Assembly: GCA_044892525.1 (NCBI GenBank) | Contig: CM097886.1 | Span: 100,192,001-100,256,000 of the forward strand | Source: Schmidtea polychroa | Lineage: Eukaryota | Reading direction: 5' to 3' | Length of the DNA stretch: 64,000 nucleotides | Part shown: positions 39,006 to 57,376 of the stretch, one piece after another | Layout of the letters: each line of letters begins with the position of its first letter | Position numbering within the stretch: the stretch's first letter is position 1 | The notes under the pieces: model-generated | The model's database searches: none | Seen by the model: the letters and a program-made list of their open reading frames with translations, nothing else | Told to the model about the DNA's origin: nothing | Program-made: the position numbers and the translations under genes

Positions 39006-40229
39006 TAAAGTAATAGTGAGATAGCATTCAAGCTACAAGTTGATAACATTTAAATTACTAGGGAGATGGAATATTAAAGCTAGCTAGAAGCAAATTGAGT
39101 TTGAAATATGGTATTTGAATTTAGAAAGGATTAAACGAGCTCGTGGGAGGTAATAATGAAATTTTTTTTTCAGTGAGAAAGAGAAACTGAAAAGGAAAAT
39201 GAATTAAAGAGATAATGAAAATAAAGAATAAGTGAGAATAAATGATGAGTAAAAGAGGAAGGTGATTAATTAATTAAAAGGGATCCCAGATGAGTAGACA
39301 AAGTTCTACAGAATTTTTTTGGTTTAAACCGGTTAAACGAATTTTGTTTTGGTTACAGAGTAGAACCAAATAAGGGGAAACAGAGATGAAAGATTAAGTA
39401 AAATAGCGGAACCGCGTAAAAGGATTAAGAAAATATGGGAGGTAATAAGCAGTAACTGACAACGACCTATCGATATTATAAATGCTAACTATAGATAATT
39501 TATACGACTATATAGATAATTGTTACTACCCCAAATAGATAATTTAAAATCGACGAAAAATATGGGTTGATGGGTAATTATATTCCGCGAAGAAGCGTAT
39601 GAGGGGAAATGAAGAGAAGTATAACAGAGGCCCTAAAACGGTGTCTGTGCTTGAATGTGGCAAAAAGGAATGATTGATTCGTGTAAGCAAAGGCAACACG
39701 ATATCATATTTTCATTGTAGACATCAATCCAACCAAGTCAATTCAGAACCAGCTCAAGAGGAATCCAGGGAATATACAAACAACCCAGGAAAAGCAATTC
39801 AGAACCCGCACAAAGGAAAACAATATCAGAACCGAACTCGACCAATTCCGCAGACGCTAACCGTAGAAAAACCCACGTGAAAAGACAGAAAAGAGTAAAA
39901 GGAAAATCACGGATAAACCCAACCTTAGATCTTCAAGTAAGCCAGGGGACGTATTATTTTCAGGAGACGAATTAGATCAACTCAAAAGAGGACGATCATT
40001 TAGGCAGCAGAGAGGAATATCACAAGGAGCAAAAAGACCCCACAAAACACCGATATACGATCAAGAAAACCCCACAGCCGGACATACGCCCAGTCGATCT
40101 AGAAGTAGAGAAAGTCTATCCGATATAACAAACAACCTAACCGGGTCAACAGAAGAATTATCCGTCCATAGTTTAGCTACATCACTAGAAAATTTAAAAG
40201 AAATAATAGCATTTCAAGAACCAATCAAG

Positions 40230-42398
40230 ATGAATGTAGCAAAAACCGACGAATATAAAGAAAAATTTAGAGGCGAACCGTTCAACGGGAATGCGAACAA
40301 GTTGGCAACGTTCATAACAAATTTTGAAGTCTATATCGATGTGTGTGGATGGACATCAGAAGCAATTAGCAAACGGATGCCGTTGTTTTTATGTGATAGC
40401 GCACTCGAAGTGTATCTAGAAGCAAAAGAAAGAAATACGAAATTAGACAATTGGGAAAACATCAAAACATTTTTGAGAAAAACATTCGGAGCCAGCAAAC
40501 CGATAAATCAAGCGTTAGGTGAACTGGCAAGTAGAAAACAAAGAGCAAACGAGTCAATTACGTTATACGCAAGTGAATTGCGAAGATTGGCAAAGAAGGC
40601 CATGAACGGAAACTTGCCGGAGGAAAATTTAATTGGTTACTTCATAGAAGGACTGCGCCGAGAAGAGGTAAGGGCCTCGGTGGGATGTCAAATGTGTAAA
40701 ACACTAGAAGAAGCTATAGATTGGGCCACAAGATGCGAACTACACCTCCCGGCACAAATGAATGTCATGCAAGAGGAGGGAAGAATCGCAACAGCAACGG
40801 TGAAAACGGAAAATGGAGATAACAATAATCATGAACCAAAGATGAATCAGTTTATACCAGGTGCGCATCAAATTTTCAAACCACCACAAGGACGATCAAA
40901 CGGGAATAACAGTGAACGCAACAACTCGAACAATGGGAACAACTTTAATAATCGACGAAATATGAACGATAACAAACAATGCCGAACATGCGGTAAACCA
41001 GGACATTGGGATAGAGATTGTTACCGAAACGCAAATTGCAATAGGTGTGGACGACGAGGACACACGGAAAATATATGCCAATCGAGAGGATGTTTTAACT
41101 GCGGGCAACCAGGTCATATCTCAAGAGACTGTCGAGAAAGGAGCCAACAGCAACGACCACCACAGCGAAATAATAACTATGCACCAAATCCGCAACGACA
41201 AAGTAATCCTAGTGAGGGAAAGCAAATGAATGTGATGCAAGAAATTTCACAAATGAAGCAGATGATGCAACAAATGATGAGACCGAGACAAGAGCAAGTA
41301 CCACAACAAACCCAGAATATACGCATGATGAGAAGCACCGAGAATCTTAACAATTATGAAGTGCAACAACATGCACAAGAATGGCAAAGATTACAAGCTG
41401 AAGAAGAGAGGATAAAAAGAGAGCGAATTCAGCAGCGACAAGAACAACCACTACGAATAAATATGATGAGGATGGTAAAGGAGATAAAGGAGCAATATTG
41501 TTACAACTATGGTAAAAATCCAAGAGTTGTACCTACGAGCGAACCAGAGAAACCGAAGGAAACAATTACAGCAGCAAAAAAGGAAAATTCAACAACACCG
41601 CTAAAAGGAAATCAGAGAATTCAGAAAATATTTTGGAAAAAGATAAAAGATAAAATCGAAAGAGAAAATGAGAAAACAAAAACAGAAGCAGAAGCAGAGA
41701 ATAACGAAAATGAAAAACAGATTAATCATCTAAGTCATGATATGATACGAGAATTAGACTCAGAGGAGCTAACGATATTCGAGAACAAAAAGTTAAAGAA
41801 AGTACCAAGAATGAGAAATTTACGAATTAATATGATGAGGACAACAAAGACGGTGTTGTCAACAGATGACGATGAGGATTATGTGAGTAGCCTTGGTGGA
41901 GAAATGTTACAGTTAAATGAAAATATCGACCAACTAAGAGAGAAGATCGGAACAGAGGAAGAAGAGAGTGAAAGCGACGTAACAAGCGAAAGCGAAGACG
42001 AGAATATCGAAATGAAATTGAGAAAAGAAAGAGAAGAATCGATAAAACAAGTAAAGGAAATACTTCCAGTGGTGGTAAGAAACCAGGAATTCATTGACAT
42101 CATACCATACCGACGCTTCATACAAAAGATAATGAAACTAGAAAGAAACGAAAAAGACCTAATACCAAACGAGGAAAAAGTGATAATAAAGAAGTATATG
42201 GAAAAAATGAAACAAGCGGAGACAACACGGTATGTAATAAAAATCGGAACGAGTAAAGGGCTCGAGAGAATATGGATAAAAAGCAGTCACAGACGACCTT
42301 TTCGATTGGATAAGAGAACATTTGGGCAGCTCGAGAAAGAAAGAATACCTGTATCAATATCAAGGAGAACAAATCAAACCAGACATGCACCTAATTGA
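40230..42398 (+). CDS. gag: Gag: capsid-like region, three CCHC zinc knuckles, Q/N-rich and acidic extensions; the frame is open from 39867
   Basis: PFNGNANKLATFITNFE...GW; RKQRANESITLYASELRRLA; CRTCGKPGHWDRDC, CNRCGRRGHTENIC, CFNCGQPGHISRDC. Confidence 0.93.
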   Translation: MNVAKTDEYKEKFRGEPFNGNANKLATFITNFEVYIDVCGWTSEAISKRMPLFLCDSALEVYLEAKERNTKLDNWENIKTFLRKTFGASKPINQALGELASRKQRANESITLYASELRRLAKKAMNGNLPEENLIGYFIEGLRREEVRASVGCQMCKTLEEAIDWATRCELHLPAQMNVMQEEGRIATATVKTENGDNNNHEPKMNQFIPGAHQIFKPPQGRSNGNNSERNNSNNGNNFNNRRNMNDNKQCRTCGKPGHWDRDCYRNANCNRCGRRGHTENICQSRGCFNCGQPGHISRDCRERSQQQRPPQRNNNYAPNPQRQSNPSEGKQMNVMQEISQMKQMMQQMMRPRQEQVPQQTQNIRMMRSTENLNNYEVQQHAQEWQRLQAEEERIKRERIQQRQEQPLRINMMRMVKEIKEQYCYNYGKNPRVVPTSEPEKPKETITAAKKENSTTPLKGNQRIQKIFWKKIKDKIERENEKTKTEAEAENNENEKQINHLSHDMIRELDSEELTIFENKKLKKVPRMRNLRINMMRTTKTVLSTDDDEDYVSSLGGEMLQLNENIDQLREKIGTEEEESESDVTSESEDENIEMKLRKEREESIKQVKEILPVVVRNQEFIDIIPYRRFIQKIMKLERNEKDLIPNEEKVIIKKYMEKMKQAETTRYVIKIGTSKGLERIWIKSSHRRPFRLDKRTFGQLEKERIPVSISRRTNQTRHAPN

Positions 42399-45300
42399 TG
42401 CATTGATCTGGCCAGGAGAAATTCAAATATTGAAATTGTATAAAGAGAAGCAACCAGCAAATATTCACGAATGGGCTAAAGACGCCAAGGCCGAGTATGA
42501 CTTTAACATCAAGCTGAAGCTGGACCAAATAAAACAATGCACCTTGCGACGAAATCTAGATAAATTAATCAAGCAAATCCAAGAACAAGTTGAGGATAAC
42601 TGGGATTTGCTCATAACAAGACGAACTGCAGACATGCATGAGCTAATGAGCCGATTACGAGATACAGAATTGCTCAGGATGAGTGATTGGAGAACCATAA
42701 ATTTGATCCACAAATACGGAAGATTAAAAGAAACGCAACCGCAGAAATTAGAAATAACCATATGGTTACCAAACGAGGAGAAACGACGAATAAAGATGAG
42801 TAATCAGAGTACGGTGGATGACTTAGTAACCAAGATAAACCAAGAGATAACGGAAAAAGTACGAAGCGAGAGTAACGACGGGATGATAGATGATGTAGTC
42901 ATGATGTACGATAAAATAATACTACGGGCCGAAGACGACACCTCGCTAAGCGAAATGGGAATATGGGATAATCATCAAATCATCAGAATATTGCCCATGG
43001 ACGAATTCCGAACAAGAGATATAACATACCAGAAAGAAATACGAGACAGGATGAAAACGCTATATCAAAAATCAGTAGAGATAATTGAAATTCATCAACA
43101 GTGGCTAAAAGAAAAAGAGCTTCAAGGAAAAATAAAGAAACTAAGTGTTAGATCCTGCAGACGAACCCCATGGGAAAGGATGTGGGATGCGGAAAGCAAA
43201 GAATGGGAAATCAGGAAAGGGATTTTCGTGGAAACAGACATTGGCGAGATAGAAAGCGAACCAGAAGAAGAGGAAGATGAACCTCCAAAATACGAAGAGG
43301 ACGAAATAGAATCGACATCGGACGACGAAAGCGAAACGGATGTCACATCAGAAAGTGAAACGGAAACCAGACATATTCATGCGATGAGGAAGAAAGAACG
43401 CGAATACGCCGATATGGACAGCGAAGAAGCGATGGAAGCTCGAGAACGAGAAGAGAAGGAAAGATATAAACAATTAGGTGATATCTTAGCAACGGGAACA
43501 AAAAATCAAAAACGTCAAGTAATAGCATTGGCTAACATCATCCTAAAGACATCAGAGAATATCCACAATCTAAGAGAAATGGCGAAAGCGATTGAGGAAT
43601 ACCGACAATATAACGAATGGTACCCAGAACAGCTAGAACAAATTATTAGGAAATGGAGAAACCAAGAATGGGCACAAGATACCCAGGAAAGGTATCGTAT
43701 CCGAGTCAAATATCCCGACAAAAGCATTGAGGATACAGAAGTACATCCAACAACAAAAATCAGAGAGTTAAAAAAGAAATTAGCATACGAAACTCCATTT
43801 CACCTACAACTATTCGGAAAATCGTTGGATGATAATGTAGATGTCGGAATAACACCCATGAGATTGGGGGAGATCAATGTATTGACAATGGCAGAAACAT
43901 TGGGAAAACCGATTAAAAGGAAGAGCAAATCCAGTAAACCTACGAAAGGTAGCTTGAGTACACCAAGCCCTAACAAAGTGGCAAGTAAATCGAATGAAAC
44001 CGAGGAAATCGAGGAAATTATATTGGAAGACAGCGATGAAGGAGCTGGAGAAAGATCACCAATTCTGGTAAGATGGCCGACAGGAGCCGAAATATGGACA
44101 ACAAGCCAACCGTCAACTAGCCATCAGCAGCCAAATAAGCTAAGTATCGAGGAGATTATCGATAATACAACAGAAACCGAAACCGACGAACAATTCCAAC
44201 GACAGAAAGGACCAACGAAAGCAACACCAGAAGGTCAAACCGACAAAATAATAGACGAATGGAACGAATGGCTGAGAAACAACGATAGCTCATTACCAAG
44301 AACGGATAACGAGAGAAACCCGAATTATGAAAATACAAGGGAAGCCGGAACAATGATGGAGAAACGGGCAAAAGGGAGACCCAAGAAGCAAGGAGAAAAA
44401 CCGGAATTTAAAACCCGAGAACAGTTGAAGCAAGAACAAGGACAAGTCAGATTAGAGAAACTGGATAAAATAGTGTGGGATCTAAAAGAGGCCCTGCCAA
44501 CTATCGAAAGAGGCGAAAAATGGATACGAGAGCTAGTAAAAGATATGTTAATAGTAACAAACCCGCAATTGAGACGGTTATGGCAACGAAAAGTAGCAAG
44601 CGTAGACGCCAGACAACTATGGAATACAATATCCGGAATAATTCCGAAATTAATCAAAGAGAAGACAAAAACCACTAAAACCGATTGGGAAGAGACAAGA
44701 AGAGTAATTGAACAATTAACGTTAAACGCAAACGACGACGAACATCATTTAGTAGTATTAACGTATCTAATGTACAATTTGATGGGATTAGCAGCAAGGA
44801 AAATACCTAACAAACAATTCGCAAATCATGTAGAAATGACCGTTACAATCATTGAAAATACAATCGAACCACATATTATCCGCGCCGGTGGGTGGAAAAG
44901 ACTCATACAAGCGCCACGAAAAAACGAGCAAGAGAGATCAATGCAAATTCGGTTGAAGAAATTACTAAACGAGCTAGAATGGGAATTGCCATTGAAAGAC
45001 CCAGCCAGCAGAAAAGCGTCGATTAATTCACTAATGATGACCATGATGATATGGATGCTCTGCACCAGTGGAGCCGCGGGATTTACTATTTACGACTGTG
45101 ACAATTCGATAATAGGAGAAAGATACTCCCTGAGAGATATAGAGGAATGTAGACAGGCATCTCCGAATAAATTAGATATAGTAAAAAAGAAAGTCTCCTA
45201 TCACGTATACCAAGAATCAGATTTCATTAGAACGCAAGCTAGAGAATGCGTAGTATCGAAGAAAGTGTTGGCATATTACTGTGGACAATATTCATATTCA

Positions 45301-48300
45301 ACCCTCATATTACCTGGATTAGATAAAGAAATAGTACCTATACAACGGGAAGACTGTAAAGAGCTTTTTAGAACCGGAGCGATGAGAATCAGGGATGGAG
45401 TAACAATACACGGACAAAGCGGAATGATCAAGACAGAAAGTATCTATGTCGCCGGACGAGTAAAATCAACTGATGGATCATGTAACGGAGGCACATATAC
45501 GATCAGAGGAGAGGTGATATCAGGAGTAGTAGTAATTGAGTCCTACACAGTGGAGTTGAAGGAATACGAAGCACAATTCGACGCAAACAACTATCAAATG
45601 AAAACCAACCCAGCATGCAGAGCTACGGAAAACGTGTGTAGAACGGGGATTTCGACTATAATATATGAAGCTAACACCCAAAAATGCCGACTCCAATTGT
45701 TAAAAAGTGCTCTATTCAATGAAGTAAAAGGAGAAATTTACGAAAACGAGGATGACGATGAAGAGAATGGAAACGTAAGGATGCGAAATGGGAAACCAGT
45801 TCCGCCATCCCCCAAAGAAAAGAGACTCATAACCCAAAAAACACCAACGGCATTAATTACAGATGACCCAGATATCGGCATGAGATTCATTAGAGAAAAA
45901 GAGACCACCAAATGTGACAGTATAGTATACCGGACGAACTACGCAGGTATCTACATGTCAAGGCAAGTAATAGACCGAGCAGTGGGAAAGGTAGCAACAG
46001 AGGACGTAAAATTGTACCTGTATGCCAATAACAAAATGGACTTTTTATTTCATCGAGGACAAACGACAATGCAAAAAGTGTATTACGATCTTATACAAAA
46101 TGACTGTTCATTGAATAAAGAGATACTAAAAACAAAATTAGCCATCGCAATAACACACCCAGATAACACAATGCCATCACTCCCGCTACCGGATGGACAT
46201 TTTGGTAGAATGGTGGGAGAGGTAATGTATACATATGCATGTACCAAGACATTTGCGCGACTGCCAAGAAAGCCCACAATTCCACCAGGGAAATGTGCAA
46301 ACGAGTTAGAAATTAGCTACAAAGGGCGGAACAGATTCGTTCAACCCGTCACTCGGATAATGAACCCAATTGGATTTTATCCAAACACCTTTAACTGTTC
46401 AAATGCATACGGACCGTTATATGAAAAACCCGATGGGAAATGGATAATGTTACCAGTAAAAACCGAAGTACAAGAGCCTAAAAAGTTTGGATTAATAGAA
46501 CTCGCAACAGAACAAGATTTCAAACCAATTGATGTGTCAAAGGCTGGTATGTACTCACCAGAGGATTTAGAAACGGCACGATTAAACGTATTATTCCCAG
46601 CAAGACGGGAATCCATTCTATCGAATATGGTTACCATAACTGGGGGAACGAATTTCCAGTCAGGCCCCAATTACGAACTATTATTGTCACCTGATCATTT
46701 TCAACAAGCCACGTCAAACATGATGAAAGCCATGTGGGGAAGATTTCTAGTGTTCGGTCAAATGATGACAGGAATATTGGGAATCATTCTTATTATACAG
46801 ATTGTTAGAGTAATATTAACTCAAATGTTAGCGTGTTTTGATATCTATAAGAGAGAAAAGAAGGTAAATTGGAAATTGATAGTGGGCTTTCTACCATTTT
46901 TGGCAAAAACAATGGTGTTGCACGGTCATTCTAAAGACATACATAGAATAAAACGATTGATCAAAATACTGACAAAAATAAAAGGAACTGACGAGGAAGT
47001 CGGTAGACGATTTCGGAAAACAATGTATGATGAAGCAACAAGGACGCAACTGAAAAAGAACAAACCAAAATTCCTAGACAGATTTAGAAATCGATCAAAC
47101 AGCAGCGATAGTGATGATGACGACAACGGGAATGACAAATACCCATATCCAAGTAGAAACCCGAATGAAAAGCCAATAGAAACAGCGCCATACTGGGAGA
47201 AAGAAAAAACAAATACCTGGATAGCCAACGGAAGTTATATACCACCGGATATCGTTGGACAACAAACAGCTTTGACCATGACACAAAATATGTATCCACA
47301 GTTACCAAGTCAACCAGGTATGAACTATATGCCGACCCGAAGAACGAAAAGTGTAGACCAAGCGGACGACGTAAGAACGATAGCAGTGATGAGTTCACCA
47401 GGAGGTGCGGCAGTAACAGTCATGATCCAAATCAACGGGAAAGAGACAAGCGCAATGATAGATACAGGGGCAAACGTATCAGCAATAGCAATAAACCAAA
47501 TACCCAGTAAATGTTGGAAAGATATCGAACAAACAACTATCCATATTATTGCATGCAGTAAAGAAACCGTAGACGTAGTAGGAAGATGGTGGACTACGTT
47601 ACGATATCAGGATAACGAAATTGAAACGTATCTAGCGGTGATACCCAAACTGAGTGAACCATGTATAATCGGAACGGATTTAATGCCGGAATTGTTTAAG
47701 GAAGTAGTAATCGATTTAACAACAATGTGTCTAAAAGACAAAATGGGTAGAATATGCAAGATGAACGCAATAATTAGATGTCCGGAGAAAATAATTGTAC
47801 CCGCAAAATCACAAATGATATGTCAAATAAAAGTGGATGCAGGAATGGAAGGAGAAGTCATTTTTGAGCCAAGCAAATCATTCGAAAAACGACGAGAATT
47901 ACCATTAGCAAGAGAAATAATAACAATAAATGAAGACGGGGAAATACCAATTAACATCACAAATTTCGAGGAAGAAGACAAGATCATATATGAAAATGAA
48001 AGATTGGGTAGATTGACACCCATGATAGACATCGAATTACCAAAAATCACCAACGAAACAACGAAAGCTGACGAATTATGGATAATTGATAGCACCTTAC
48101 TAACGGAAAAAGAAAAGGAAAGACTTCAACAATTATTGATAGAATATAAAGATATATTCGCAATTTCGGATTTAGATTTGGGAGCATGCGATGTTACACT
48201 ACACGCAATACCATTAATAGACGAAACTCCAATCGCACTACGTCCATACAAACTAGCAGAGAAGCAAAAAGAGATAGCCGAAGCAGAAGTACAAAAAATG

Positions 48301-51300
48301 CTAGATGCACAAGTGATCGAACCAAGTTGTTCGCCATGGCAATTTCCAGTAGTCATGGTGAAGAAAAAAGACGGTACTCAGAGATTCTGTATCGATTATC
48401 GGAAATTAAATGCAGTAACAAAAAGAGACACATACCCTTTACCAGACATCAATGAGATGTTACTTATGTTACAGGGGGCCGCATATTTTACATCTTTAGA
48501 TCTGAAAAGTGGATATTGGCAGATCAAAGTCAAGGAGGAAGACAAAGAGAAAACAGCATTCACATTGGGCCGAGATCTATACCAATTCAGGAAAATGCCG
48601 TTCGGACTGACCAATGCCCCAGCATCATTCCAGAGATGTATGAATTTTGTCACACACGGGATCAAGCAGTGTATGGTATATATTGATGATTTATTAATAT
48701 ATTCAGCAACTTTCGAACAACATTTGGAAGACATTAGAAACGTGTTCATCCGATTACGACAATGGAAATTGAAACTCAAACCATCCAAATGTGATTGGGC
48801 AAAAGAAAAAGTTACGTTCTTAGGACACATAGTGTCAGCAAAAGGCAAAGAACCAGATCCAAGAAACATAGAAAAAATAAAAACATGTCCAGCACCAAAA
48901 ACTGTCACCCAAGTTCAAGAATTTCTCGGATTATGCGGATATTATCGAAAATTCATCAAAAACTATGCAGGTATTGCGAAACCAATACAGGAATTAGTGA
49001 AAAAGGATATTTCATTTATTTGGGGTGCAGAACAACAAAAAGCGTTTGAGACATTGCGAGATAAATTAATTGAAGCCCCAATACTAGTACATCCTGATTT
49101 CAAGAAACCGTTCTTATTAGCAACAGATGCAAGTGGATATGCAGCCGGAGCAATATTGGGACAACTCGACGAAGAAGGAAAAGAAAGAGTGATTGGATAC
49201 TACAGTAGAACGTTTAAAAAGCATGAGAAAAACTATTCCGTAACCGAGAGAGAAGCGTTAGCAATCATACAAGCGATTAAACATTTTCGATATTTGTTAT
49301 GGGGACACGAAATATGTATCACCACGGATCACCAACCATTAGTATGGCTTGGTCAACACAAAGAAGCCTCAAGTAGATTGATGCGATGGGCAATGCAGTT
49401 ACAAGAATATTCACCGTTCATAAAATTCAAAGCGGGAAGAGCGAATGCCAATGCGGATTGTATGTCCAGATTTATCTTTCCAGATTTAGTAGATCACGAA
49501 ATGCAACGAATATGTCTGATGGTAGCAGAAGATTTAGATTTTTGCCAATTACGGAAAGACCAACAAGAGGATACAGAGTTGAAGCAAATCATTGAATATG
49601 TGAAAACAGGGAAAGCAGAGGTATATGAGAAAGATCAAAAATTGAAGGAGCATATGGATAAACATCGACATCGATATATTATCGAGAAGGATTGGTTATT
49701 GATAATGGATGGCGAGAAAAGACTGATGTGCATTCCCGAGAATAGACGTAAAGATCTACTAACACAATACCATGACGGAAGACTCGGAGGACATATGTCA
49801 TCTAAAAAGACGTTGGCACGAATGAAACAAAAGTATTTTTGGCCTACATTGACCGAGGATGTAACGGAATGGGTGAAAAATTGCATAACTTGCGCAACCA
49901 GAAAAAACACGGGAACAAAATGGAAGGCACCATTAAAGCCAATGCCAGTACCAGCGGAACCAATGACAATGATATCAATGGACGTAGTCGGTCCATTACC
50001 AGAATCAGATAGAGGGAATATATATATATTGGTGATTACGGATTATTTGACGAAATTCCCCGAAGCATTCGCAATGGCAGATCAGAAAGCAAGAACAATC
50101 GCAAAAATACTAGTAGAGGAGATATGCTGTCGATATGGAACACCGAAACAGATACTAACTGATCAAGGGACAAATTTCATGAGCGAAATAACGAGCGAAG
50201 TCACCAACTACTTCAAGATCGCAAAATTAAGAACATCACCGTACCATCCACAAACTAATGGGATGACAGAAAGATTCAATGGAACACTGATTCATATGTT
50301 ATCAAATTATGTCGATCGTCATCAACGCGACTGGGACGAGTATATAAAATTATGTTTAATGGCTTACAGAATGTCGATTCACGCGTCCACAAAGATGAGT
50401 CCGTTTAAGTTGATGTACGGTAGAGAATGCAATATGCCAATGGATTTAGAATATCAGCCACCAATATCACAATACATGGAAATAGACGATTATGTAACCA
50501 AGTTCAAGGAAAGAATGCAGGAAATCTGGGAAACTGCAGGATTGAATATAAAATTTTATCAAGAAAGTTACAAAGAGTTACATGATAGAAAGAAAAACGT
50601 CAAACAGCATACGTTTCAAACGGGCGATTGGGTGATGATCGAAACACCAGAATTAATTCCAGGAACCACCAAAAAATTACAACGAAACGGCAAAGGTCCG
50701 TATGAGATTCTATTCATCGGAGAAACCAATGTGAGAGTACGATTAGTGAACAACCCTTTTACAAGACCAATATACGTAAATGTTGCACGATGTAAGCCAA
50801 TACCGAAAACAGCCACCAGCCAGCCGGAAGGGCGAACCTTAACCACAAGATCACAAACATATAGAATAAACATGTTACAGCAGATAAACGAACCAACAGG
50901 TAATCGATTAGGGTTACAACCATCAGAAGCCGAGAAAATCATAAAGGAAGTAAAAGTTAAAATGCCCGGATGGGCAAAAGACAGATTAGATTTTGAGATA
51001 TTGGGCGGTCTGCTAACAATGATCGAAAATTATGCAAACCGAGAAAGAACACACCCATTACTTAGGGTAGTAAAAAGTCAATGGCCTATATTATTTACGA
51101 TCACAGACCATTATGGAGATACACCGCTGCACAAACTTTTAAAGGTCGGGAATAATGAACAAATACTGGAAACGATCGAAGCATTTCGCGACTGTAACAT
51201 TTCGACGGATCAAGAAAATAACCAAGGTTACACCCCACTAATGATAGCAGCCAATCGGGATAAAGCTAAAGATATTATCATCGCATTACTCGAAACTGGG

Positions 51301-54099
51301 TCAAAGATAACCACGCAAGACCACAACCAGAAAAATGCACTACATCATGCAATCGAAGGGAAAAGTACGGAAGCCTTCATAATCTTAGTAGATCTATTAG
51401 CATATGAGGATAATAGGGAGATAGGAAACATGTATGACGGGTTACTAACTGCAATCAAAGAGAGATTAATAACAATTGCTGGATTACTAATTGCATGGAG
51501 AAACCCGATAAAAAACGATTATATGGTAGATATAAACGAAACATTTACCAAAGGAGAAAACACCTTGATGAGAGAAGCGATGAGAGGACACCACCTATTC
51601 GAAATTCCAAATCAACTACTACAACGTGGCATAAAGTTCTCAAATCACAAAGACGAACAACTAATCAGAAAACGAATTACCAACTTCGAAAAAGCTATAT
51701 CTCAATTTACCGATAAAGTACAAGTAAAATTTTGGGAAACCGTGAGTGTTTTACATATGATGGAAACTATGAACAACATTCGAGAAAACTACCTAAGTAT
51801 TATTCAAGTTCTAATGGCGGAGGAACGCATTAACAGTTCGAACAAGAAAAAGATAAAAATAAAGAAAGTAAAAGCAAGAGAGTCTGGGGAACAAGTCGAT
51901 CAACCAATAACCGATATAGCAACAACAAATAAACCAAAGACAATAAACTCCGACCAAGAGATAGTAGTACGTAAGGCTAAAGAAGTATTCTTTGAAGAAA
52001 TGCAAGATCTATCCGATGAAGCGATACTAGCAAAAATAACCAAAACAGTACACACCTACGCAAGAGATCAGACCACGAATCTAGACATAGGAAAAATAAA
52101 AACATTTATACCACTAGCATTCACCTTACCAACAAAAGACTCAAGAACACCATTACAACAAGCCATTTTAGCAGCAAAAGAAAACAGAGCAATAACCATC
52201 ATAAGAATCCTCAGAGACTTCGGAGAAGAATCTAATGCAAAAAATGAACAAGGAGAAACAGCAATGATGTATGCAGCCATAACAAATATACACCCGAAAA
52301 CATTACATATACTACATCGATCGGGATCAAGACTGGATGAAATATCAAACGAAGGAAATTCTACCATGGATTGGGCAACGATACAACCAAACTTGGAAAT
52401 GATTAGATTCATTTGTAAAAATGCTACAAGAACCGAGGTAGAAAATATCTGTAAAAACACGTCACAGTTCCAATGGAACACGATACGGATGAACTTAGAA
52501 GCCATGAAGTTATTGGTAACATGGAGAATACCACAAAGCAATAAATATGCAATAAATATAAATGAGTTCTACGAAAACGGAGAAAATGCGATGGTTAAAA
52601 ATACACTAACAAAAGGAGGAACTCCGAAAATCATAATGATCGTATTGAACAGGGAGGACCTCAAATTCACGCAAAATCTAAACGAACAAAAGCGAATCGG
52701 AAAACATCGCCGTATACAATTGAGAGAACTGGTAAAAGAATGGAATAGAAAGAGACATGTAGCAACAGGCAGAAAGGAGTTCGAATTCGAGGCAAAATTA
52801 GCAAGAAACAGAGTGCTAACGGCATACCACAGATTGTTGAATGATATAAATGTCGAGGACGACATTTTAAACGATAGCGGGGGAGATAAAGACGATAAAG
52901 ACGACGATAATAATGAAAAAGGTCGAAACGGGAATAAAGAGAAAGAGAAATCAGAGGGGAATAATCAAGAAAATAACAACGCGAGTAGGAAAAAAGAAGA
53001 AAACAACCCGAGAAACCGAATAAAGCAAGAAGAAAAGACGAATAGTGGAAAACAGAGGGTATGTCTACTTTTTACCAACAAAGAAATGGAGACAAATATG
53101 ATGATAATGATACTCGTATTAACAATGGTGGAAATGATAACAGCCCAGGGAGGAATGAGAACGATAAAAGAAGCCAAAGAAACGGAAAATAAGGACAACA
53201 AAGAGGAAGAACTAAAACAAGAAAAGAAAAAACAAGTACAAGAGCAGCAATGGGATTTAAAAGAAGAATGGGATTTAAAAGAAAGGTGTATATTAGGAAG
53301 ATGTATGTCTAGAGCTTATCAGAGACTAGTGTTAAAAAATGAAGATGCAGAACCAATAACGGAAGTAAGAATACAAGAAGCATATCGAAATCGAGACGGA
53401 AAGAGAATAACGAAAGTCAAAGGGAAGGAGGTACATCTGGGAAAAGGAGGTGAGGTAGTGATAACGCAACTCCAGCCAAGAAAAGAACACAAAGTCTGCA
53501 TTGCAAGATTAAGACCGGGGGAAGACTGTCTACAATATGTAATACAGCAACAACCTCCAAAAGAATACACAATATGCATCTGGAGAAAAGATACAGCGAG
53601 AGAATGTCGACGATACCCTGGGAAAAGAGGGAAGAAAAGAAAAATCGATGATGGAAAAGATGAGCAAGGAAAACGCAAGAAAAACAGTGAGAAACATCAA
53701 GACAATTATGTATCCGAGGAGGAGATGGAGAAAATACAAAAAATGGCAAAGGAAGGTATGAACGAGGAAATAGCAAGAATACGAGGAATGATGAAAGGAA
53801 ATGGCAAAGACGGTAATCTAAAAAGCACAGAAGCAATATCAACACTAACGAGCAAGGAAAAAGCGGAAGTTATAAGCGTAAAACAGATGATGTGGATCAG
53901 CGGCATAATAATAACAGGGGCCTTTTTAATCATAACGGGGGGGACAATAAAAATAATCAAAGATAGACGGCATCGCGGAGAACTAGAAATGGCCAGAATA
54001 AGAAATTTTCAACATCGTGTAAAACGACCAAGTAATATCAAGCAGGAACAGTGGGTGGAGGCCTGGAATGCTCAGCTCCCTCCAAGCTCACGTATATAG
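42322..54099 (+). CDS. pol: 3925-aa polyprotein (+1 frame relative to gag, open from 42280): UBL domains, Bcl-2-like, Env, PR, dUTPase-like, RT, RNase H, IN, ankyrins, C-terminal membrane protein
   Basis: Uninterrupted 11.8-kb ORF with MIDTGANVS, YIDD, ATDASGYA, HX4H...CX2C, MDVVGPLP, TDQGTNF, PQTNGMTERFN and GPY. Confidence 0.95.
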   Translation: MGSSRKKEYLYQYQGEQIKPDMHLIDALIWPGEIQILKLYKEKQPANIHEWAKDAKAEYDFNIKLKLDQIKQCTLRRNLDKLIKQIQEQVEDNWDLLITRRTADMHELMSRLRDTELLRMSDWRTINLIHKYGRLKETQPQKLEITIWLPNEEKRRIKMSNQSTVDDLVTKINQEITEKVRSESNDGMIDDVVMMYDKIILRAEDDTSLSEMGIWDNHQIIRILPMDEFRTRDITYQKEIRDRMKTLYQKSVEIIEIHQQWLKEKELQGKIKKLSVRSCRRTPWERMWDAESKEWEIRKGIFVETDIGEIESEPEEEEDEPPKYEEDEIESTSDDESETDVTSESETETRHIHAMRKKEREYADMDSEEAMEAREREEKERYKQLGDILATGTKNQKRQVIALANIILKTSENIHNLREMAKAIEEYRQYNEWYPEQLEQIIRKWRNQEWAQDTQERYRIRVKYPDKSIEDTEVHPTTKIRELKKKLAYETPFHLQLFGKSLDDNVDVGITPMRLGEINVLTMAETLGKPIKRKSKSSKPTKGSLSTPSPNKVASKSNETEEIEEIILEDSDEGAGERSPILVRWPTGAEIWTTSQPSTSHQQPNKLSIEEIIDNTTETETDEQFQRQKGPTKATPEGQTDKIIDEWNEWLRNNDSSLPRTDNERNPNYENTREAGTMMEKRAKGRPKKQGEKPEFKTREQLKQEQGQVRLEKLDKIVWDLKEALPTIERGEKWIRELVKDMLIVTNPQLRRLWQRKVASVDARQLWNTISGIIPKLIKEKTKTTKTDWEETRRVIEQLTLNANDDEHHLVVLTYLMYNLMGLAARKIPNKQFANHVEMTVTIIENTIEPHIIRAGGWKRLIQAPRKNEQERSMQIRLKKLLNELEWELPLKDPASRKASINSLMMTMMIWMLCTSGAAGFTIYDCDNSIIGERYSLRDIEECRQASPNKLDIVKKKVSYHVYQESDFIRTQARECVVSKKVLAYYCGQYSYSTLILPGLDKEIVPIQREDCKELFRTGAMRIRDGVTIHGQSGMIKTESIYVAGRVKSTDGSCNGGTYTIRGEVISGVVVIESYTVELKEYEAQFDANNYQMKTNPACRATENVCRTGISTIIYEANTQKCRLQLLKSALFNEVKGEIYENEDDDEENGNVRMRNGKPVPPSPKEKRLITQKTPTALITDDPDIGMRFIREKETTKCDSIVYRTNYAGIYMSRQVIDRAVGKVATEDVKLYLYANNKMDFLFHRGQTTMQKVYYDLIQNDCSLNKEILKTKLAIAITHPDNTMPSLPLPDGHFGRMVGEVMYTYACTKTFARLPRKPTIPPGKCANELEISYKGRNRFVQPVTRIMNPIGFYPNTFNCSNAYGPLYEKPDGKWIMLPVKTEVQEPKKFGLIELATEQDFKPIDVSKAGMYSPEDLETARLNVLFPARRESILSNMVTITGGTNFQSGPNYELLLSPDHFQQATSNMMKAMWGRFLVFGQMMTGILGIILIIQIVRVILTQMLACFDIYKREKKVNWKLIVGFLPFLAKTMVLHGHSKDIHRIKRLIKILTKIKGTDEEVGRRFRKTMYDEATRTQLKKNKPKFLDRFRNRSNSSDSDDDDNGNDKYPYPSRNPNEKPIETAPYWEKEKTNTWIANGSYIPPDIVGQQTALTMTQNMYPQLPSQPGMNYMPTRRTKSVDQADDVRTIAVMSSPGGAAVTVMIQINGKETSAMIDTGANVSAIAINQIPSKCWKDIEQTTIHIIACSKETVDVVGRWWTTLRYQDNEIETYLAVIPKLSEPCIIGTDLMPELFKEVVIDLTTMCLKDKMGRICKMNAIIRCPEKIIVPAKSQMICQIKVDAGMEGEVIFEPSKSFEKRRELPLAREIITINEDGEIPINITNFEEEDKIIYENERLGRLTPMIDIELPKITNETTKADELWIIDSTLLTEKEKERLQQLLIEYKDIFAISDLDLGACDVTLHAIPLIDETPIALRPYKLAEKQKEIAEAEVQKMLDAQVIEPSCSPWQFPVVMVKKKDGTQRFCIDYRKLNAVTKRDTYPLPDINEMLLMLQGAAYFTSLDLKSGYWQIKVKEEDKEKTAFTLGRDLYQFRKMPFGLTNAPASFQRCMNFVTHGIKQCMVYIDDLLIYSATFEQHLEDIRNVFIRLRQWKLKLKPSKCDWAKEKVTFLGHIVSAKGKEPDPRNIEKIKTCPAPKTVTQVQEFLGLCGYYRKFIKNYAGIAKPIQELVKKDISFIWGAEQQKAFETLRDKLIEAPILVHPDFKKPFLLATDASGYAAGAILGQLDEEGKERVIGYYSRTFKKHEKNYSVTEREALAIIQAIKHFRYLLWGHEICITTDHQPLVWLGQHKEASSRLMRWAMQLQEYSPFIKFKAGRANANADCMSRFIFPDLVDHEMQRICLMVAEDLDFCQLRKDQQEDTELKQIIEYVKTGKAEVYEKDQKLKEHMDKHRHRYIIEKDWLLIMDGEKRLMCIPENRRKDLLTQYHDGRLGGHMSSKKTLARMKQKYFWPTLTEDVTEWVKNCITCATRKNTGTKWKAPLKPMPVPAEPMTMISMDVVGPLPESDRGNIYILVITDYLTKFPEAFAMADQKARTIAKILVEEICCRYGTPKQILTDQGTNFMSEITSEVTNYFKIAKLRTSPYHPQTNGMTERFNGTLIHMLSNYVDRHQRDWDEYIKLCLMAYRMSIHASTKMSPFKLMYGRECNMPMDLEYQPPISQYMEIDDYVTKFKERMQEIWETAGLNIKFYQESYKELHDRKKNVKQHTFQTGDWVMIETPELIPGTTKKLQRNGKGPYEILFIGETNVRVRLVNNPFTRPIYVNVARCKPIPKTATSQPEGRTLTTRSQTYRINMLQQINEPTGNRLGLQPSEAEKIIKEVKVKMPGWAKDRLDFEILGGLLTMIENYANRERTHPLLRVVKSQWPILFTITDHYGDTPLHKLLKVGNNEQILETIEAFRDCNISTDQENNQGYTPLMIAANRDKAKDIIIALLETGSKITTQDHNQKNALHHAIEGKSTEAFIILVDLLAYEDNREIGNMYDGLLTAIKERLITIAGLLIAWRNPIKNDYMVDINETFTKGENTLMREAMRGHHLFEIPNQLLQRGIKFSNHKDEQLIRKRITNFEKAISQFTDKVQVKFWETVSVLHMMETMNNIRENYLSIIQVLMAEERINSSNKKKIKIKKVKARESGEQVDQPITDIATTNKPKTINSDQEIVVRKAKEVFFEEMQDLSDEAILAKITKTVHTYARDQTTNLDIGKIKTFIPLAFTLPTKDSRTPLQQAILAAKENRAITIIRILRDFGEESNAKNEQGETAMMYAAITNIHPKTLHILHRSGSRLDEISNEGNSTMDWATIQPNLEMIRFICKNATRTEVENICKNTSQFQWNTIRMNLEAMKLLVTWRIPQSNKYAININEFYENGENAMVKNTLTKGGTPKIIMIVLNREDLKFTQNLNEQKRIGKHRRIQLRELVKEWNRKRHVATGRKEFEFEAKLARNRVLTAYHRLLNDINVEDDILNDSGGDKDDKDDDNNEKGRNGNKEKEKSEGNNQENNNASRKKEENNPRNRIKQEEKTNSGKQRVCLLFTNKEMETNMMIMILVLTMVEMITAQGGMRTIKEAKETENKDNKEEELKQEKKKQVQEQQWDLKEEWDLKERCILGRCMSRAYQRLVLKNEDAEPITEVRIQEAYRNRDGKRITKVKGKEVHLGKGGEVVITQLQPRKEHKVCIARLRPGEDCLQYVIQQQPPKEYTICIWRKDTARECRRYPGKRGKKRKIDDGKDEQGKRKKNSEKHQDNYVSEEEMEKIQKMAKEGMNEEIARIRGMMKGNGKDGNLKSTEAISTLTSKEKAEVISVKQMMWISGIIITGAFLIITGGTIKIIKDRRHRGELEMARIRNFQHRVKRPSNIKQEQWVEAWNAQLPPSSRI
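44452..44910 (+). other. Bcl-2-like domain within the polyprotein
   Basis: BH2-like IENTIEPHIIRAGGWKRLI and a hydrophobic BH1-position helix HLVVLTYLMYNL. NWGR is absent. Confidence 0.65.
45031..46920 (+). other. env: Env glycoprotein (chuvirus-G/herpes gB-like class III fusogen): signal peptide 45031-45081, ectodomain, TM about 46750-46830
   Basis: AG/FTIYDC, YSLRDIEEC, ECVVSKKVLAYYCGQYS, DCKEL, DGSCNGG, a Cys-rich ectodomain and FGQMMTGILGIILIIQIVRVIL match the chuvirus glycoprotein-like pattern. Confidence 0.8.
47410..47710 (+). other. Aspartic protease domain
   Basis: INGKETSAMIDTGANVSAI ... CIIGTDL. Confidence 0.93.
48140..49470 (+). other. Reverse transcriptase and RNase H domains
   Basis: SPWQFPVVMVKKKDG, RFCIDYRKLN, LDLKSGYWQI, MPFGLTNAPASFQR, VYIDD; TDASG, EREALAI, TDHQPL. 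Confidence 0.97.
49720..50730 (+). other. Integrase (HHCC, DDE, GPY/F)
   Basis: HDGRLGGH ... CITC; ISMDVVGP; LTDQG; ERFNGTL; KGPYEI. Confidence 0.97.
51100..52620 (+). other. Two ankyrin-repeat modules downstream of integrase
   Basis: YGDTPLHKLL, QGYTPLMIAA, QKNALHHAI; RTPLQQAI, QGETAMMYAA, EGNSTMDWAT. Confidence 0.85.
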
Positions 54100-57362: not shown

Positions 57363-57376
57363 AGATAAAGGGGAAG

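What the first reader, a model, noticed from the sequence alone, without database searches (positions are those of the whole stretch)
45031..46920. Env fusogen embedded between Gag and protease in the same reading frame (gag-env-pol order)
Seen: an internal hydrophobic signal (LMMTMMIWMLCTSGAAG), a roughly 550-aa Cys-rich ectodomain with chuvirus-G-like motifs, a TM segment, then the DTG protease about 200 aa later with no stop. Established: env of retroviruses, errantiviruses and env-bearing BEL/Pao elements normally lies 3' of pol, usually as its own ORF. Inference: the polyprotein would be threaded through the ER like an alphavirus or flavivirus polyprotein, with signal peptidase and PR releasing the products, and Pol made downstream of the Env tail.
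Basis: partly seen in the sequence, partly recalled or inferred. Interest (0 to 1): 0.92.

Follow-up and report, generated by a model that had tools for sequence, protein, structure and literature searches.

The report
Giant planarian-type retroelement with in-frame fusogen
The window holds a young, 30.8-kb Burro-like Ty3/gypsy endogenous retrovirus whose giant reading frame carries a chuvirus-type, herpesvirus-gB-fold (class III) envelope protein upstream of protease and polymerase. This is real and striking, but the arrangement was already described for planarian Burro elements in 2019 and for gag-env-pol elements of nematodes, bryozoans and flatworms since then.

Summary
Window 45031-46920 lies inside one uninterrupted 3925-codon frame (42322-54099). 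It encodes a signal-like segment, a 555-aa ectodomain with 14 Cys, a strong TM helix, and then DTG protease 208 aa later with no stop. It matches Pfam PF24664 (Monjiviricetes_fusion) at E=1.8e-73. An AlphaFold model (pLDDT 89.9) hits chuvirus glycoproteins (E 1e-42) and solved herpesvirus gB (E 1.5e-14), so it has a class III fusogen fold. In 13 diverged relatives that carry env together with gag or pol parts, the order is always gag>env>PR>RT>RH>IN.

Two corrections apply. In this copy the CCHC Gag (40230-42398) is in a different frame from the env-pol frame. About 900 aa of other domains also lie between Gag and Env.

The host element spans 32557-63403, has 4.2-kb LTRs differing by 3 substitutions, and fits the published Burro/GYPSM1 giant elements of dugesiid planarians. 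Arkhipova & Yushenova 2019 already reported env in frame between gag and pol in Burro. Chary & Hayashi (eLife 2026) and Sacco 2022 report gB-type GAG-ENV-POL elements.

The ER-threaded-polyprotein mechanism is plausible: the hydropathy pattern leaves PR/RT/IN on the cytosolic side. It remains untested.

One feature I did not find described in what I read is a second signal+TM module after integrase, present in all 6 members that extend that far.

The parts
32557..63403 (+). Whole LTR retroelement, 30,847 bp; flanked by ATAT on both sides (probable 4-bp target-site duplication)
   Evidence: LTR pair found by self-BLAST; termini TGTTGG...CCAACA and flanks read; element about 39% G+C and A-rich (41% A) on the + strand, against about 30% G+C in the flank
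32557..36802 (+). 5' LTR (4246 bp); contains a 253-codon ORF at 35502-36263
   Evidence: 99.08% identical to the 3' LTR: 3 substitutions and 4 indels totalling 36 nt; ORF, no Pfam match
59194..63403 (+). 3' LTR (4210 bp); the same ORF lies at 62103-62864
37263..37742 (+). Accessory ORF, 159 aa, with a C-terminal RING finger
   Evidence: Pfam zf-C3HC4_3 E=3e-8
38246..39000 (.). Tandem repeats in the leader (79-nt unit in about 6 copies, then a 116-nt pair)
   Evidence: the repeat finder families D2 and D7
40230..42398 (+). gag ORF, 722 aa: Retrotrans_gag domain plus three CCHC knuckles; its frame differs from that of the giant ORF, which it overlaps
   Evidence: Pfam PF03732 E=1.4e-10 and zf-CCHC E=2e-10; three knuckles; frames and overlap
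42322..54099 (+). Giant ORF, 3925 codons, no stop: pre-Env region, Env, PR, RT, RNase H, IN, ankyrin repeats, C-terminal membrane module
44695..44895 (+). Weak Bcl-2-family match (ORF aa 792-858), ending about 45 aa before the Env signal
   Evidence: Pfam PF00452 E=0.034, 15 bits, below the cut-off. A BCL2-like motif in this position is published for Burro. Not confirmed here
45031..45081 (+). Internal signal-peptide-like segment of Env (ORF aa 904-920); predicted cleavage after its last residue is an inference
   Evidence: Hydropathy; charge bias. It occupies the same place as the N-terminal signal peptide of 98 stand-alone viral-type G proteins, which have a median of 26 aa before the first conserved Cys
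45082..46746 (+). Env ectodomain (ORF aa 921-1475), class III fusion-glycoprotein fold, 14 conserved Cys
   Evidence: PF24664 E=1.8e-73. AF2 pLDDT 89.9. Foldseek to gB E=1.5e-14 and to chuvirus G E=1.3e-42. All 14 Cys invariant or at least 90% conserved in 106 sequences
46747..46839 (+). Env transmembrane helix (ORF aa 1476-1506)
   Evidence: KD maximum 2.4; 2 K/R before and 5 after; conserved in relatives
46864..46920 (+). Conserved juxtamembrane, weakly hydrophobic segment (ORF aa 1515-1533); read as interfacial, not membrane-spanning
   Evidence: KD 1.41. K/R clusters on both sides, 4 and 5. In the model it forms two short helices with a kink. Below threshold in two relatives, which have a Cys pair there
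46921..47418 (+). Env cytoplasmic tail / linker to PR (ORF aa 1534-1699), no Cys, no Pfam match
47419..47694 (+). Aspartic protease (DTG at ORF aa 1714)
   Evidence: Pfam RVP E=8.3e-8
48358..49410 (+). Reverse transcriptase and RNase H
   Evidence: Pfam RVT_1 E=1.3e-36, RT_RNaseH E=1e-39
49732..50301 (+). Integrase (H2C2 zinc domain plus core)
   Evidence: Pfam Integrase_H2C2 E=5.5e-21, rve E=1.2e-12
51190..52425 (+). Two blocks of ankyrin repeats
   Evidence: Pfam Ank_2 E=7.8e-18 and related families
53083..54099 (+). C-terminal membrane module of the giant ORF: second signal-like segment (aa 3592-3610), 246-aa charged segment with 6 Cys, TM (aa 3857-3879), 46-aa basic tail
   Evidence: A similar pair of hydrophobic segments (signal-like plus TM) after IN in 5 of 5 relatives that extend past IN. 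No sequence similarity in the three pairwise comparisons made (window, P0001, P0003) and no Pfam match
54717..56105 (+). Accessory ORF, 462 aa, TRAF-like (RING plus MATH)
   Evidence: Pfam TRAF-mep_MATH E=3.5e-25, zf-C3HC4 E=9.5e-5
56325..58963 (+). Three further accessory ORFs: 345 aa and 233 aa, charged and of coiled-coil appearance, and 211 aa
   Evidence: no Pfam family above threshold

Best explanation
The region is the envelope gene of a young, structurally intact giant Ty3/gypsy endogenous retrovirus of the Burro type, known from dugesiid planarians. The Env is a class III fusion glycoprotein of the chuvirus (Jingchuvirales) G family and has the herpesvirus gB fold. It was captured long ago and fixed 5' of protease, so it is translated in the same frame as PR-RT-RH-IN.

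The most likely working (inferred, not shown) runs as follows.
1. Translation of the long frame exposes the retained signal peptide of the captured G gene as an internal signal.
2. The 555-aa ectodomain is translocated into the ER lumen and disulfide-bonded.
3. The single TM helix stops transfer.
4. The tail, PR, RT, RNase H, IN and the ankyrin repeats stay on the cytosolic side.
5. Signal peptidase on the lumenal side and the element's own protease on the cytosolic side would then release Env.
6. A second signal-like/TM pair at the end of the frame would insert a second, small type I membrane protein in the same way.
For: **Shown**
- Uninterrupted frame.
- PF24664 at E=1.8e-73.
- 1021 relatives. 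The stand-alone ones, about 650-690 aa, include the glycoprotein of Tacheng Tick Virus 4, a virus that one search's BFVD hits place among chu-like viruses.
- All 14 Cys conserved across 106 sequences.
- AF2 model pLDDT 89.9 with a 48-residue central helix. Foldseek gave gB at E=1.5e-14, probability 1.0, with about 640 aligned columns, and chuvirus Gs at E=1e-42 to 1e-37 with TM 0.6-0.65.
- Order gag>env>PR>RT>RH>IN in 13 of 13 representatives that are at most 50% identical to each other.
- The internal hydrophobic segment sits where 98 stand-alone Gs have their N-terminal signal peptide.
- Charge bias fits an N-in signal and a C-in TM. The second weak hydrophobic segment is positively charged on both sides.
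- One relative (L002) has no Met in or near its signal segment, so its Env cannot start there.
- LTRs differ by 3 substitutions in 4.2 kb.
- The element's anatomy matches the published description of Burro: more than 30 kb, three CCHC knuckles, RING, MATH/TRAF, ankyrin, tandem repeats, and env between a BCL2-like region and PR.
Against: - There is no expression, protein or processing data.
- No dedicated signal or topology predictor was available. Topology rests on Kyte-Doolittle hydropathy and charge counts.
- A signal that emerges only after 900 or more residues, and a 1:1 Env:Pol output, would be unusual for a retroelement.
- The window copy and one relative have a cluster of Met codons exactly at the start of the signal segment. 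That would also suit separate initiation on a subgenomic RNA.
- Identity with Burro could not be tested by direct sequence comparison, because no Burro sequence or planarian genome is reachable with these tools. The published dUTPase-like and BIR motifs were not detected here by Pfam. MATH/TRAF is a downstream ORF rather than part of the polyprotein.
Confidence: 0.85

Rival explanations
1. The gene content is the same, but Env is made from a spliced or otherwise subgenomic mRNA, as in retroviruses and errantiviruses. It would initiate at the Met cluster at the start of the signal segment. In-frame continuity with Pol would then be incidental, or would serve only the genomic-RNA translation product (possibly with env removed as an intron).
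For: Retroviruses and Drosophila errantiviruses express env from spliced RNA (established knowledge). The window copy has five Met codons within the first ten residues of the signal segment, and L003 has a similar cluster. All stand-alone relatives start with Met about 26 aa before the first conserved Cys.
Against: No stop codon ends the Env tail in the window or in relatives P0001, P0003, P0005, P0008, P0014 and P0018, so such an mRNA would still read into Pol. Relative L002 has no Met in its signal segment. Frame continuity has been kept across lineages only 29-42% identical in Env, which suggests it is selected. No splice prediction or RNA data were available.
Confidence: 0.3
2. The env segment is a decaying relic, a captured G gene no longer used, and the long frame survives only because this copy is young.
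For: Many endogenous env genes are inactive. Only one N-glycosylation sequon lies in 550 aa. Fusion activity has not been shown for any member.
Against: All 14 Cys and many other positions are conserved across relatives that have diverged to 29-42% identity. The fold prediction is confident. The frame is uninterrupted in many independent lineages. This pattern indicates long-term purifying selection on the protein.
Confidence: 0.05
3. The arrangement is an assembly chimera, or a nested insertion of a separate env-bearing element or an endogenous chuvirus fragment into a gypsy element.
For: The window has two N runs, one of them 40 bp upstream of the 5' LTR. Chuvirus-derived insertions are common in invertebrate genomes (PMC7642597 and PMC10084718, listed).
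Against: There are no N runs, repeats or frame changes at the env borders. The same junctions (pre-Env/Env and Env/PR) occur in independent contigs from four different assemblies. The closest relatives of this Env are all polyprotein-embedded, not viral.
Confidence: 0.02

Closest known systems
Burro / GYPSM1 giant gypsy-like LTR retroelements of the planarian Schmidtea mediterranea and other Dugesiidae (Jurka 2007; Grohme et al. 2018; Arkhipova & Yushenova 2019, PMC6431247)
   Same: More than 30 kb in total with multi-kb LTRs and an internal part of about 22-25 kb. Gag with Retrotrans_gag plus three CCHC knuckles. RING, MATH/TRAF and ankyrin domains and leader tandem repeats. A BCL2-like region followed by env in frame upstream of PR-RT-RH-IN. 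Env hits to mononegavirus glycoproteins. AT-rich host genome.
   Different: Here Gag is in a separate frame (published Burro1 has one 4873-aa ORF including Gag). MATH/TRAF is a downstream accessory ORF rather than part of the polyprotein. The dUTPase-like and BIR motifs were not detected by Pfam. The 2019 paper linked the env first to gypsy/baculovirus F-type Env by HHpred, whereas the fold found here is class III (gB/chuvirus G). Direct sequence identity to Burro could not be tested.
GAG-ENV-POL 'errantiviruses' with HSV/gB-type Env in Nematoda, Bryozoa and Platyhelminthes (Chary & Hayashi, eLife 2026, PMC13524379; Sacco et al. 2022, J Gen Virol, cited there)
   Same: A Ty3/gypsy pol with a class III gB-type env placed between gag and pol. 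The ectodomain is flanked by a signal/TM and a TM. Cysteine bridges are conserved. The authors infer an ancient origin.
   Different: Those elements are described as separate GAG, ENV and POL ORFs found with gaps allowed, and are of ordinary size. Here env is fused in one frame with pol inside a 3925-aa polyprotein that also carries host-like domains and a second membrane module.
Glycoproteins of Chuviridae/Jingchuvirales (for example Tacheng Tick Virus 4 G) and their endogenous copies captured by mosquito BEL/Pao elements (Dezordi et al. 2020, PMC7642597)
   Same: Same Pfam family (PF24664), same 14-Cys pattern, same predicted fold (Foldseek E=1e-42 to 1e-37, TM 0.6-0.65). N-terminal signal and C-terminal TM in the same places.
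   Different: Only 18-23% identical in the 106-sequence alignment (22-27% over the stretches matched). The viral proteins are stand-alone ORFs of about 650-690 aa with a tail of about 88 aa. In the mosquito elements the gene lies next to BEL/Pao pol, as stated in the paper, and the order there was not checked here.
Herpesvirus glycoprotein B (solved structures such as 9mvu, 6esc, 2gum)
   Same: Overall class III fold. Foldseek probability 1.0, E about 1e-14, about 640 aligned columns. The model fits post-fusion forms (TMq about 0.41) better than the pre-fusion form (TMq 0.22).
   Different: About 10% sequence identity. No sequence-level hit to any PDB chain. TM-scores below 0.5, so domain arrangement differs or the monomer model is imperfect.
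ER-threaded viral polyproteins (flavivirus and alphavirus structural polyproteins), a comparison from established knowledge
   Same: The proposed logic is the same: internal signal and stop-transfer sequences set the topology, signal peptidase cuts on the lumenal side, and a viral protease cuts on the cytosolic side.
   Different: This is analogy only, with no homology. No processing data exist for this element. Those viruses do not place a reverse transcriptase downstream.

Membership tests
Class III viral fusion glycoproteins (chuvirus G / gB / rhabdovirus G / gp64) | Sequence membership in a curated family of such proteins | tested here: met
   PF24664 Monjiviricetes_fusion E=1.8e-73, 248 bits against a cut-off of 27. 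Named relative: Tacheng Tick Virus 4 glycoprotein, E=1.6e-36.
Class III viral fusion glycoproteins (chuvirus G / gB / rhabdovirus G / gp64) | Multi-domain elongated fold with a long central helix, matching solved class III structures | tested here: met
   AF2 pLDDT 89.9, helix at residues 328-375 of the piece. Foldseek gave 116 PDB matches at E<=1e-3; the 50 listed are all herpesvirus gB, best E=1.5e-14. TM-scores are only 0.41-0.45.
Class III viral fusion glycoproteins (chuvirus G / gB / rhabdovirus G / gp64) | Type I topology: cleavable signal, ectodomain, single C-terminal TM | tested here: inconclusive
   Hydropathy, charge bias and register with stand-alone relatives all fit. No dedicated predictor (SignalP/DeepTMHMM) was available, and the signal is internal here.
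Class III viral fusion glycoproteins (chuvirus G / gB / rhabdovirus G / gp64) | Conserved disulfide framework | tested here: met
   All 14 ectodomain Cys are invariant or at least 90% conserved in 106 sequences. There is 1 Cys in the 550 aa before the signal and none in the tail. Pairing was not examined.
Class III viral fusion glycoproteins (chuvirus G / gB / rhabdovirus G / gp64) | Bipartite internal fusion loops at the tip of domain I; trimeric assembly | not tested
   Model coordinates could not be inspected, and only a monomer was predicted.
Class III viral fusion glycoproteins (chuvirus G / gB / rhabdovirus G / gp64) | Membrane-fusion activity | not testable with these tools
   No functional data exist. 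Such an assay is outside what this report may propose.
Ty3/gypsy (Metaviridae) LTR retroelement | LTRs with TG...CA termini and a short target-site duplication | tested here: met
   4.2-kb LTRs, 99.08% identical, TGTTGG...CCAACA termini, ATAT on both flanks.
Ty3/gypsy (Metaviridae) LTR retroelement | Domain order PR-RT-RNase H-IN, and Gag with CCHC knuckles | tested here: met
   Pfam hits in that order; three CCHC knuckles.
Ty3/gypsy (Metaviridae) LTR retroelement | tRNA primer-binding site next to the 5' LTR and a polypurine tract before the 3' LTR | tested here: inconclusive
   An 18-nt stretch starting with TGG lies 7 nt after the 5' LTR and looks like the complement of a tRNA 3' end. No tRNA gene in the window was available for comparison. 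The sequence before the 3' LTR is not clearly purine-rich.
Burro / GYPSM1 giant planarian retroelements | Total length above 30 kb with multi-kb LTRs, in an AT-rich genome | tested here: met
   30,847 bp; LTRs of 4.2 kb; flank about 30% G+C.
Burro / GYPSM1 giant planarian retroelements | Accessory domains: RING, MATH/TRAF, ankyrin, coiled coil, tandem repeats | tested here: met
   MATH/TRAF is a separate downstream ORF here.
Burro / GYPSM1 giant planarian retroelements | Ubiquitin-like and BCL2-like regions upstream of env; dUTPase-like region between PR and RT; BIR | tested here: inconclusive
   Bcl-2 family E=0.034 and a ubiquitin-fold (PI3K_rbd) hit E=0.0026, both below cut-off. No dUTPase or BIR hit. 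The published assignments used HHpred, which is more sensitive.
Burro / GYPSM1 giant planarian retroelements | Env in frame between the gag-side domains and PR | tested here: met
   published description.
Burro / GYPSM1 giant planarian retroelements | Nucleotide or protein identity to the published Burro-1 to -4 sequences; planarian host | not testable with these tools
   No Burro sequence or planarian assembly is reachable. The closest proteins found are 37-42% identical in Env and come from unnamed ENA assemblies. An exact look-up of the TRAF-like ORF found nothing.

The most novel reading that the evidence does not exclude
The family may use an obligate, doubly membrane-threaded polyprotein. 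The first signal/TM cassette would insert the class III fusogen. Its uncleaved or cleaved signal would at the same time leave the upstream Bcl-2-like domain tail-anchored in the ER membrane, as cellular Bcl-2 proteins are. A second, conserved-in-position but fast-evolving signal/TM cassette after integrase would encode a hitherto undescribed second virion or regulatory membrane protein at the canonical env locus, for example a receptor-binding partner of the fusogen. In two relatives a PR-like domain lies just upstream of this second cassette, which may point to membrane-proximal processing.
Probability: 0.25. Interest if true: 0.65.

Novelty: already known. Interest (0 to 1): 0.3.

Why it matters
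The element shows that a retroelement can carry a complete viral fusogen inside its Gag-Pol reading frame. That raises real questions about how membrane insertion, stoichiometry and proteolytic release are organised, and whether giant planarian retroelements behave as enveloped viruses. The arrangement itself is already in the literature (2019, 2022, 2023/2026), so this window adds a confirmed, young, uninterrupted example rather than a discovery.

This analysis adds four things:
1. The Burro-type env is class III (gB/chuvirus-G fold) by a confident model, not F-type.
2. The internal hydrophobic segment is the retained signal peptide of the captured gene, in exact register with viral relatives.
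3. The hydropathy and charge pattern keeps PR/RT/IN cytosolic.
4. A second signal+TM module after integrase recurs in all six members that extend that far.

Points 2 to 4 make the expression mechanism directly testable with transcript and proteomic data from a tractable model animal.

Tried and rejected
- **PDB sequence search with Env** gave only chance hits. The fold search was needed.
- **Word-indexed homologue search with the 630-aa Env piece alone** found nothing, because close relatives are all embedded in long proteins. The whole-ORF search with a region and the exhaustive HMMER search succeeded.
- **Bcl-2-like region.** The PDB sequence search found nothing. The homologue search found nothing. 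Single-sequence AlphaFold gave pLDDT 43.7, all-helical but unusable, so I ran no fold search on it. The equivalent regions of three relatives show no Bcl-2 signal. The assignment stays a weak lead that agrees with the published annotation.
- **C-terminal membrane modules.** There is no pairwise similarity between window, L001 and L002 and no Pfam family.
- **Source organism.** The exact look-up of the TRAF-like ORF is not on record. The Grohme 2018 and Sacco 2022 papers are not held.
- **Are the related ENA contigs transcripts or DNA?** No poly(A) and no terminal repeats were found, so this is undecided.
- **Late-domain-like motifs.** There is one YPxL in the Env tail and one PPxY in the pre-Env region. 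The counts are about what chance would give in 3925 aa, so I do not use them.
- **Nested insertion or assembly artefact:** rejected (see the rival explanations).

Full report
**1. What is in the sequence**

The finding's coordinates lie inside a single + strand reading frame, 42322-54099, of 3925 codons with no stop. Numbering from its first codon:

- Residues 904-920 form a hydrophobic segment ending in small residues.
- Residues 921-1475 hold 14 Cys. The 550 residues before them hold 1 Cys, and the tail holds none.
- Residues 1476-1506 are the most hydrophobic stretch of the whole frame (19-residue Kyte-Doolittle maximum 2.4).
- The only DTG of the frame is at residue 1714, 208 residues after that helix.

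Pfam places PR, RT, RNase H, the integrase zinc domain and the integrase core downstream in that order, followed by two blocks of ankyrin repeats.

**2. Is it an envelope fusogen?**

- The 630-aa piece matches Pfam PF24664 (Monjiviricetes_fusion, 'viral fusion glycoprotein') at E=1.8e-73, 248 bits against a cut-off of 27.
- An exhaustive HMMER search of 1.84 billion representative proteins found 1021 relatives at E<=1e-3, 484 at E<=1e-10 and 47 at E<=1e-30.
- The relatives fall into two tiers. The top tier consists of long proteins, 29-42% identical in Env among those with full-length matches. The second tier consists of stand-alone proteins of about 650-690 aa, 22-27% identical. One of these is the glycoprotein of Tacheng Tick Virus 4, and another is an endogenous copy in a beetle genome.
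- In a 106-sequence alignment all 14 Cys are invariant or at least 90% conserved.
- AlphaFold2 on that alignment gave mean pLDDT 89.9 and pTM 0.66, with a 48-residue central helix.
- Foldseek against predicted viral structures returned chuvirus-type glycoproteins first (E=1.3e-42 to 1e-37, TM 0.6-0.65).
- Against solved structures it returned herpesvirus gB: 116 matches at E<=1e-3, best E=1.5e-14, probability 1.0, about 640 aligned columns, TM 0.41-0.45. Post-fusion forms fitted better than the pre-fusion form.
- Sequence search alone finds nothing in the PDB.

The protein is thus a member of the chuvirus-G family and has the class III fold. Fusion loops, trimer formation and activity were not tested.

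**3. The element around it**

- Self-comparison shows two direct repeats, 32557-36802 and 59194-63403. They differ by 3 substitutions and 4 indels, have TGTTGG...CCAACA termini, and are flanked by ATAT on both sides.
- The element is 30,847 bp long, about 39% G+C and A-rich on the coding strand. It sits in a flank of about 30% G+C.
- Besides the giant frame it carries the following:
  - an ORF inside each LTR;
  - a RING-finger ORF;
  - leader tandem repeats;
  - a gag ORF (40230-42398) with Retrotrans_gag and three CCHC knuckles;
  - a TRAF-like RING+MATH ORF;
  - three further ORFs.
- The gag ORF is in a different frame from the giant ORF and overlaps its open stretch.
- In relatives P0001, P0003, P0011, P0018 and P0019, the Gag-like N-terminal domain lies on the same protein as Env. 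Published Burro1 has one ORF that includes Gag. The single frame change in this copy may therefore be either a lineage-specific frameshift site or one break. I cannot tell which.

**4. Is the order a family trait?**

- Three long relatives from ENA assemblies (P0001, P0002, P0003; loci L001-L003) and others from the exhaustive search were mapped with Pfam and BLASTP.
- Thirteen representatives, each at most 50% identical to the others, carry Env on the same protein as Gag and/or Pol parts.
- In all thirteen the order is gag > env > PR > RT > RNase H > IN. None has env 3' of integrase.
- Several have two or three PR-like domains. One relative has its long frame split once elsewhere.
- The env position is therefore ancient and conserved, not a one-off insertion.

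**5. Topology and likely mechanism**

*Evidence that the internal segment is a retained signal peptide*
- The 98 stand-alone relatives all begin with Met. They have a median of 26 residues, with a hydrophobic core, before the first conserved Cys. This is an ordinary N-terminal signal peptide.
- The window's internal hydrophobic segment lies within the 22 residues before the same Cys. It is the retained signal peptide of the captured gene.

*Charge distribution*
- The signal has 3 K/R before it and 1 after.
- The TM helix has 2 K/R before it and 5 after.
- A weakly hydrophobic, conserved juxtamembrane segment (residues 1515-1533) has K/R clusters on both sides. In the model it forms two short kinked helices. 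It falls below threshold in two relatives, which carry a Cys pair there. I read it as interfacial, not membrane-spanning.

*Resulting topology*
- With one signal and one TM, the tail, PR, RT, RNase H, IN and the ankyrin repeats remain cytosolic.
- The proposed cleavages, by signal peptidase on the lumenal side and by the element's protease on the cytosolic side, are inference.

*The main rival: a spliced or subgenomic env mRNA*
- For it: the Met cluster at the start of the signal in the window and in L003.
- Against it: no stop after the Env tail in any lineage, and no Met in the signal of L002.
- I put about 0.5 on obligate polyprotein threading as the main route and about 0.3 on a separate mRNA. 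The two are not mutually exclusive.

**6. Comparison with the literature**

- Arkhipova & Yushenova 2019 (PMC6431247) describe the giant Burro/GYPSM1 elements of Schmidtea mediterranea and other Dugesiidae.
  - Their features are: more than 30 kb; Gag with three CCHC knuckles; RING, MATH/TRAF, BIR, ankyrin, Ubl, BCL2-like and dUTPase-like motifs; and an env region between BCL2 and PR with hits to arthropod and fish mononegavirus glycoproteins.
[quoted passage not shown] They cite Sacco et al. 2022 for the nematode case. They also note that the chuvirus-like glycoprotein is structurally similar to gB.
- The window's element matches the Burro description in size, LTR length, host composition, Gag knuckles, accessory domains and env position. 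There are differences:
  - Gag is in another frame.
  - MATH/TRAF is a downstream ORF.
  - There is no Pfam-level dUTPase or BIR.
  - The Bcl-2 hit is only E=0.034.
- Direct identity could not be tested. I file the element as a Burro-type element with about 0.8 confidence, and as a gB-type GAG-ENV-POL Ty3/gypsy element with above 0.95 confidence. The core finding is already known.

**7. What this analysis adds**

- The Burro-type env is class III. The 2019 paper's first HHpred link was to gypsy/F-type Env.
- The internal signal is in register with viral signal peptides.
- The segment pattern keeps the enzymes cytosolic.
- A second signal-like/TM pair follows integrase in the window (residues 3592-3610 and 3857-3879, with 246 charged residues and 6 Cys between them and a 46-aa basic tail).
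  - It also occurs in all five relatives that extend past IN.
  - These modules show no sequence similarity in the three pairwise comparisons made (window, P0001, P0003) and match no Pfam family.
  - In two relatives a PR-like domain lies just before the module.
  - I did not see this module mentioned in the papers I read. Its role is unknown.
- A speculative point: the weak Bcl-2-like region ends about 45 aa before the Env signal. After signal-peptidase cleavage the upstream product would end in a membrane anchor, the arrangement of tail-anchored cellular Bcl-2 proteins. The evidence for the Bcl-2 assignment here is weak.

**8. Verdict**

- The feature is real and biologically remarkable but already described, so interest is modest (0.3).
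- The open question is the expression and processing route. It can be addressed with descriptive transcript, proteomic and census data.
- A functional fusion or infectivity test is outside what this report may propose.

Noticed in passing
window 53083-54099 (ORF aa 3588-3925); P0001, P0003, P0005, P0008, P0014: A second signal-like segment plus TM helix, 235-400 aa apart, closes the polyprotein after integrase in the window and in all five relatives that reach that far. The modules share no detectable sequence similarity in the three pairwise comparisons made (window, P0001, P0003) and match no Pfam family. In two relatives a PR-like domain sits just upstream.
   Followed up: partly
window 44695-44895: There is a sub-threshold Bcl-2-family match (E=0.034) ending about 45 aa before the Env signal. 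If real, signal-peptidase cleavage would leave it with a C-terminal membrane anchor, like cellular tail-anchored Bcl-2 proteins. It was not confirmed by PDB search, homologue search or single-sequence folding, and it is absent from three relatives.
   Followed up: partly
window 35502-36263 and 62103-62864: Each 4.2-kb LTR contains an identical 253-codon ORF with no Pfam match. An ORF inside an LTR is unusual.
   Followed up: no
window 37263-37742, 54717-56105, 56325-58963: The accessory ORFs are a RING-finger protein, a TRAF-like RING+MATH protein, two charged ORFs of coiled-coil appearance and a 211-aa ORF. These host-like apoptosis/ubiquitin-pathway domains match what is published for Burro.
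   Followed up: partly
L001, L002, L003; P0002, P0003, P0005, P0017: Relatives carry two or three tandem PR-like domains between Env and RT, and P0001/P0003 carry a further one after IN. One relative has its long frame split once between the PR-like repeats and PR-RT.
   Followed up: partly
window 32517-32556: The 40 bases between the N run (32381-32516) and the 5' LTR end in a CCAACA + ATATGTTAA string. The same string occurs at the 3' LTR end plus its flank. This may be the end of an older related LTR or a repetitive target site. The N run was left as it is.
   Followed up: no
window 36810-36827: An 18-nt stretch starting with TGG lies 7 nt after the 5' LTR and looks like the complement of a tRNA 3' end (candidate primer-binding site). 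No tRNA gene in the window was available to compare with it.
   Followed up: no
window 14829-20597 (- strand) with 17071-19017 (+ strand): An older LTR-retroelement remnant lies on the minus strand (CCHC gag, PR-like, RT with DUF7047 as in BEL/Pao-type elements, RNase H-like and IN-like ORFs). It is in several pieces and appears to be interrupted by ORFs that, by eye, resemble the hAT-like transposase ORFs elsewhere in the window (no Pfam match for the one scanned).
   Followed up: partly
window 22338-24069 (+) and 26512-28243 (-); 29814-31571 (-): Two near-identical copies of a hAT-like transposon fragment (hAT dimerisation domain) lie in inverted orientation about 2.4 kb apart. Next to them is a 585-aa DUF4371 transposase-like ORF. 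The flank is a transposon-rich, AT-rich region.
   Followed up: partly
window 9200-9597: A 12-nt minisatellite forms an array of about 400 bp.
   Followed up: no
P0008: A 2627-aa Env-PR-RT-RH-IN polyprotein of this family is deposited in NCBI as a hypothetical protein of a 'Flavobacteriaceae bacterium' metagenome-assembled genome. It is almost certainly a mis-binned eukaryotic contig.
   Followed up: no
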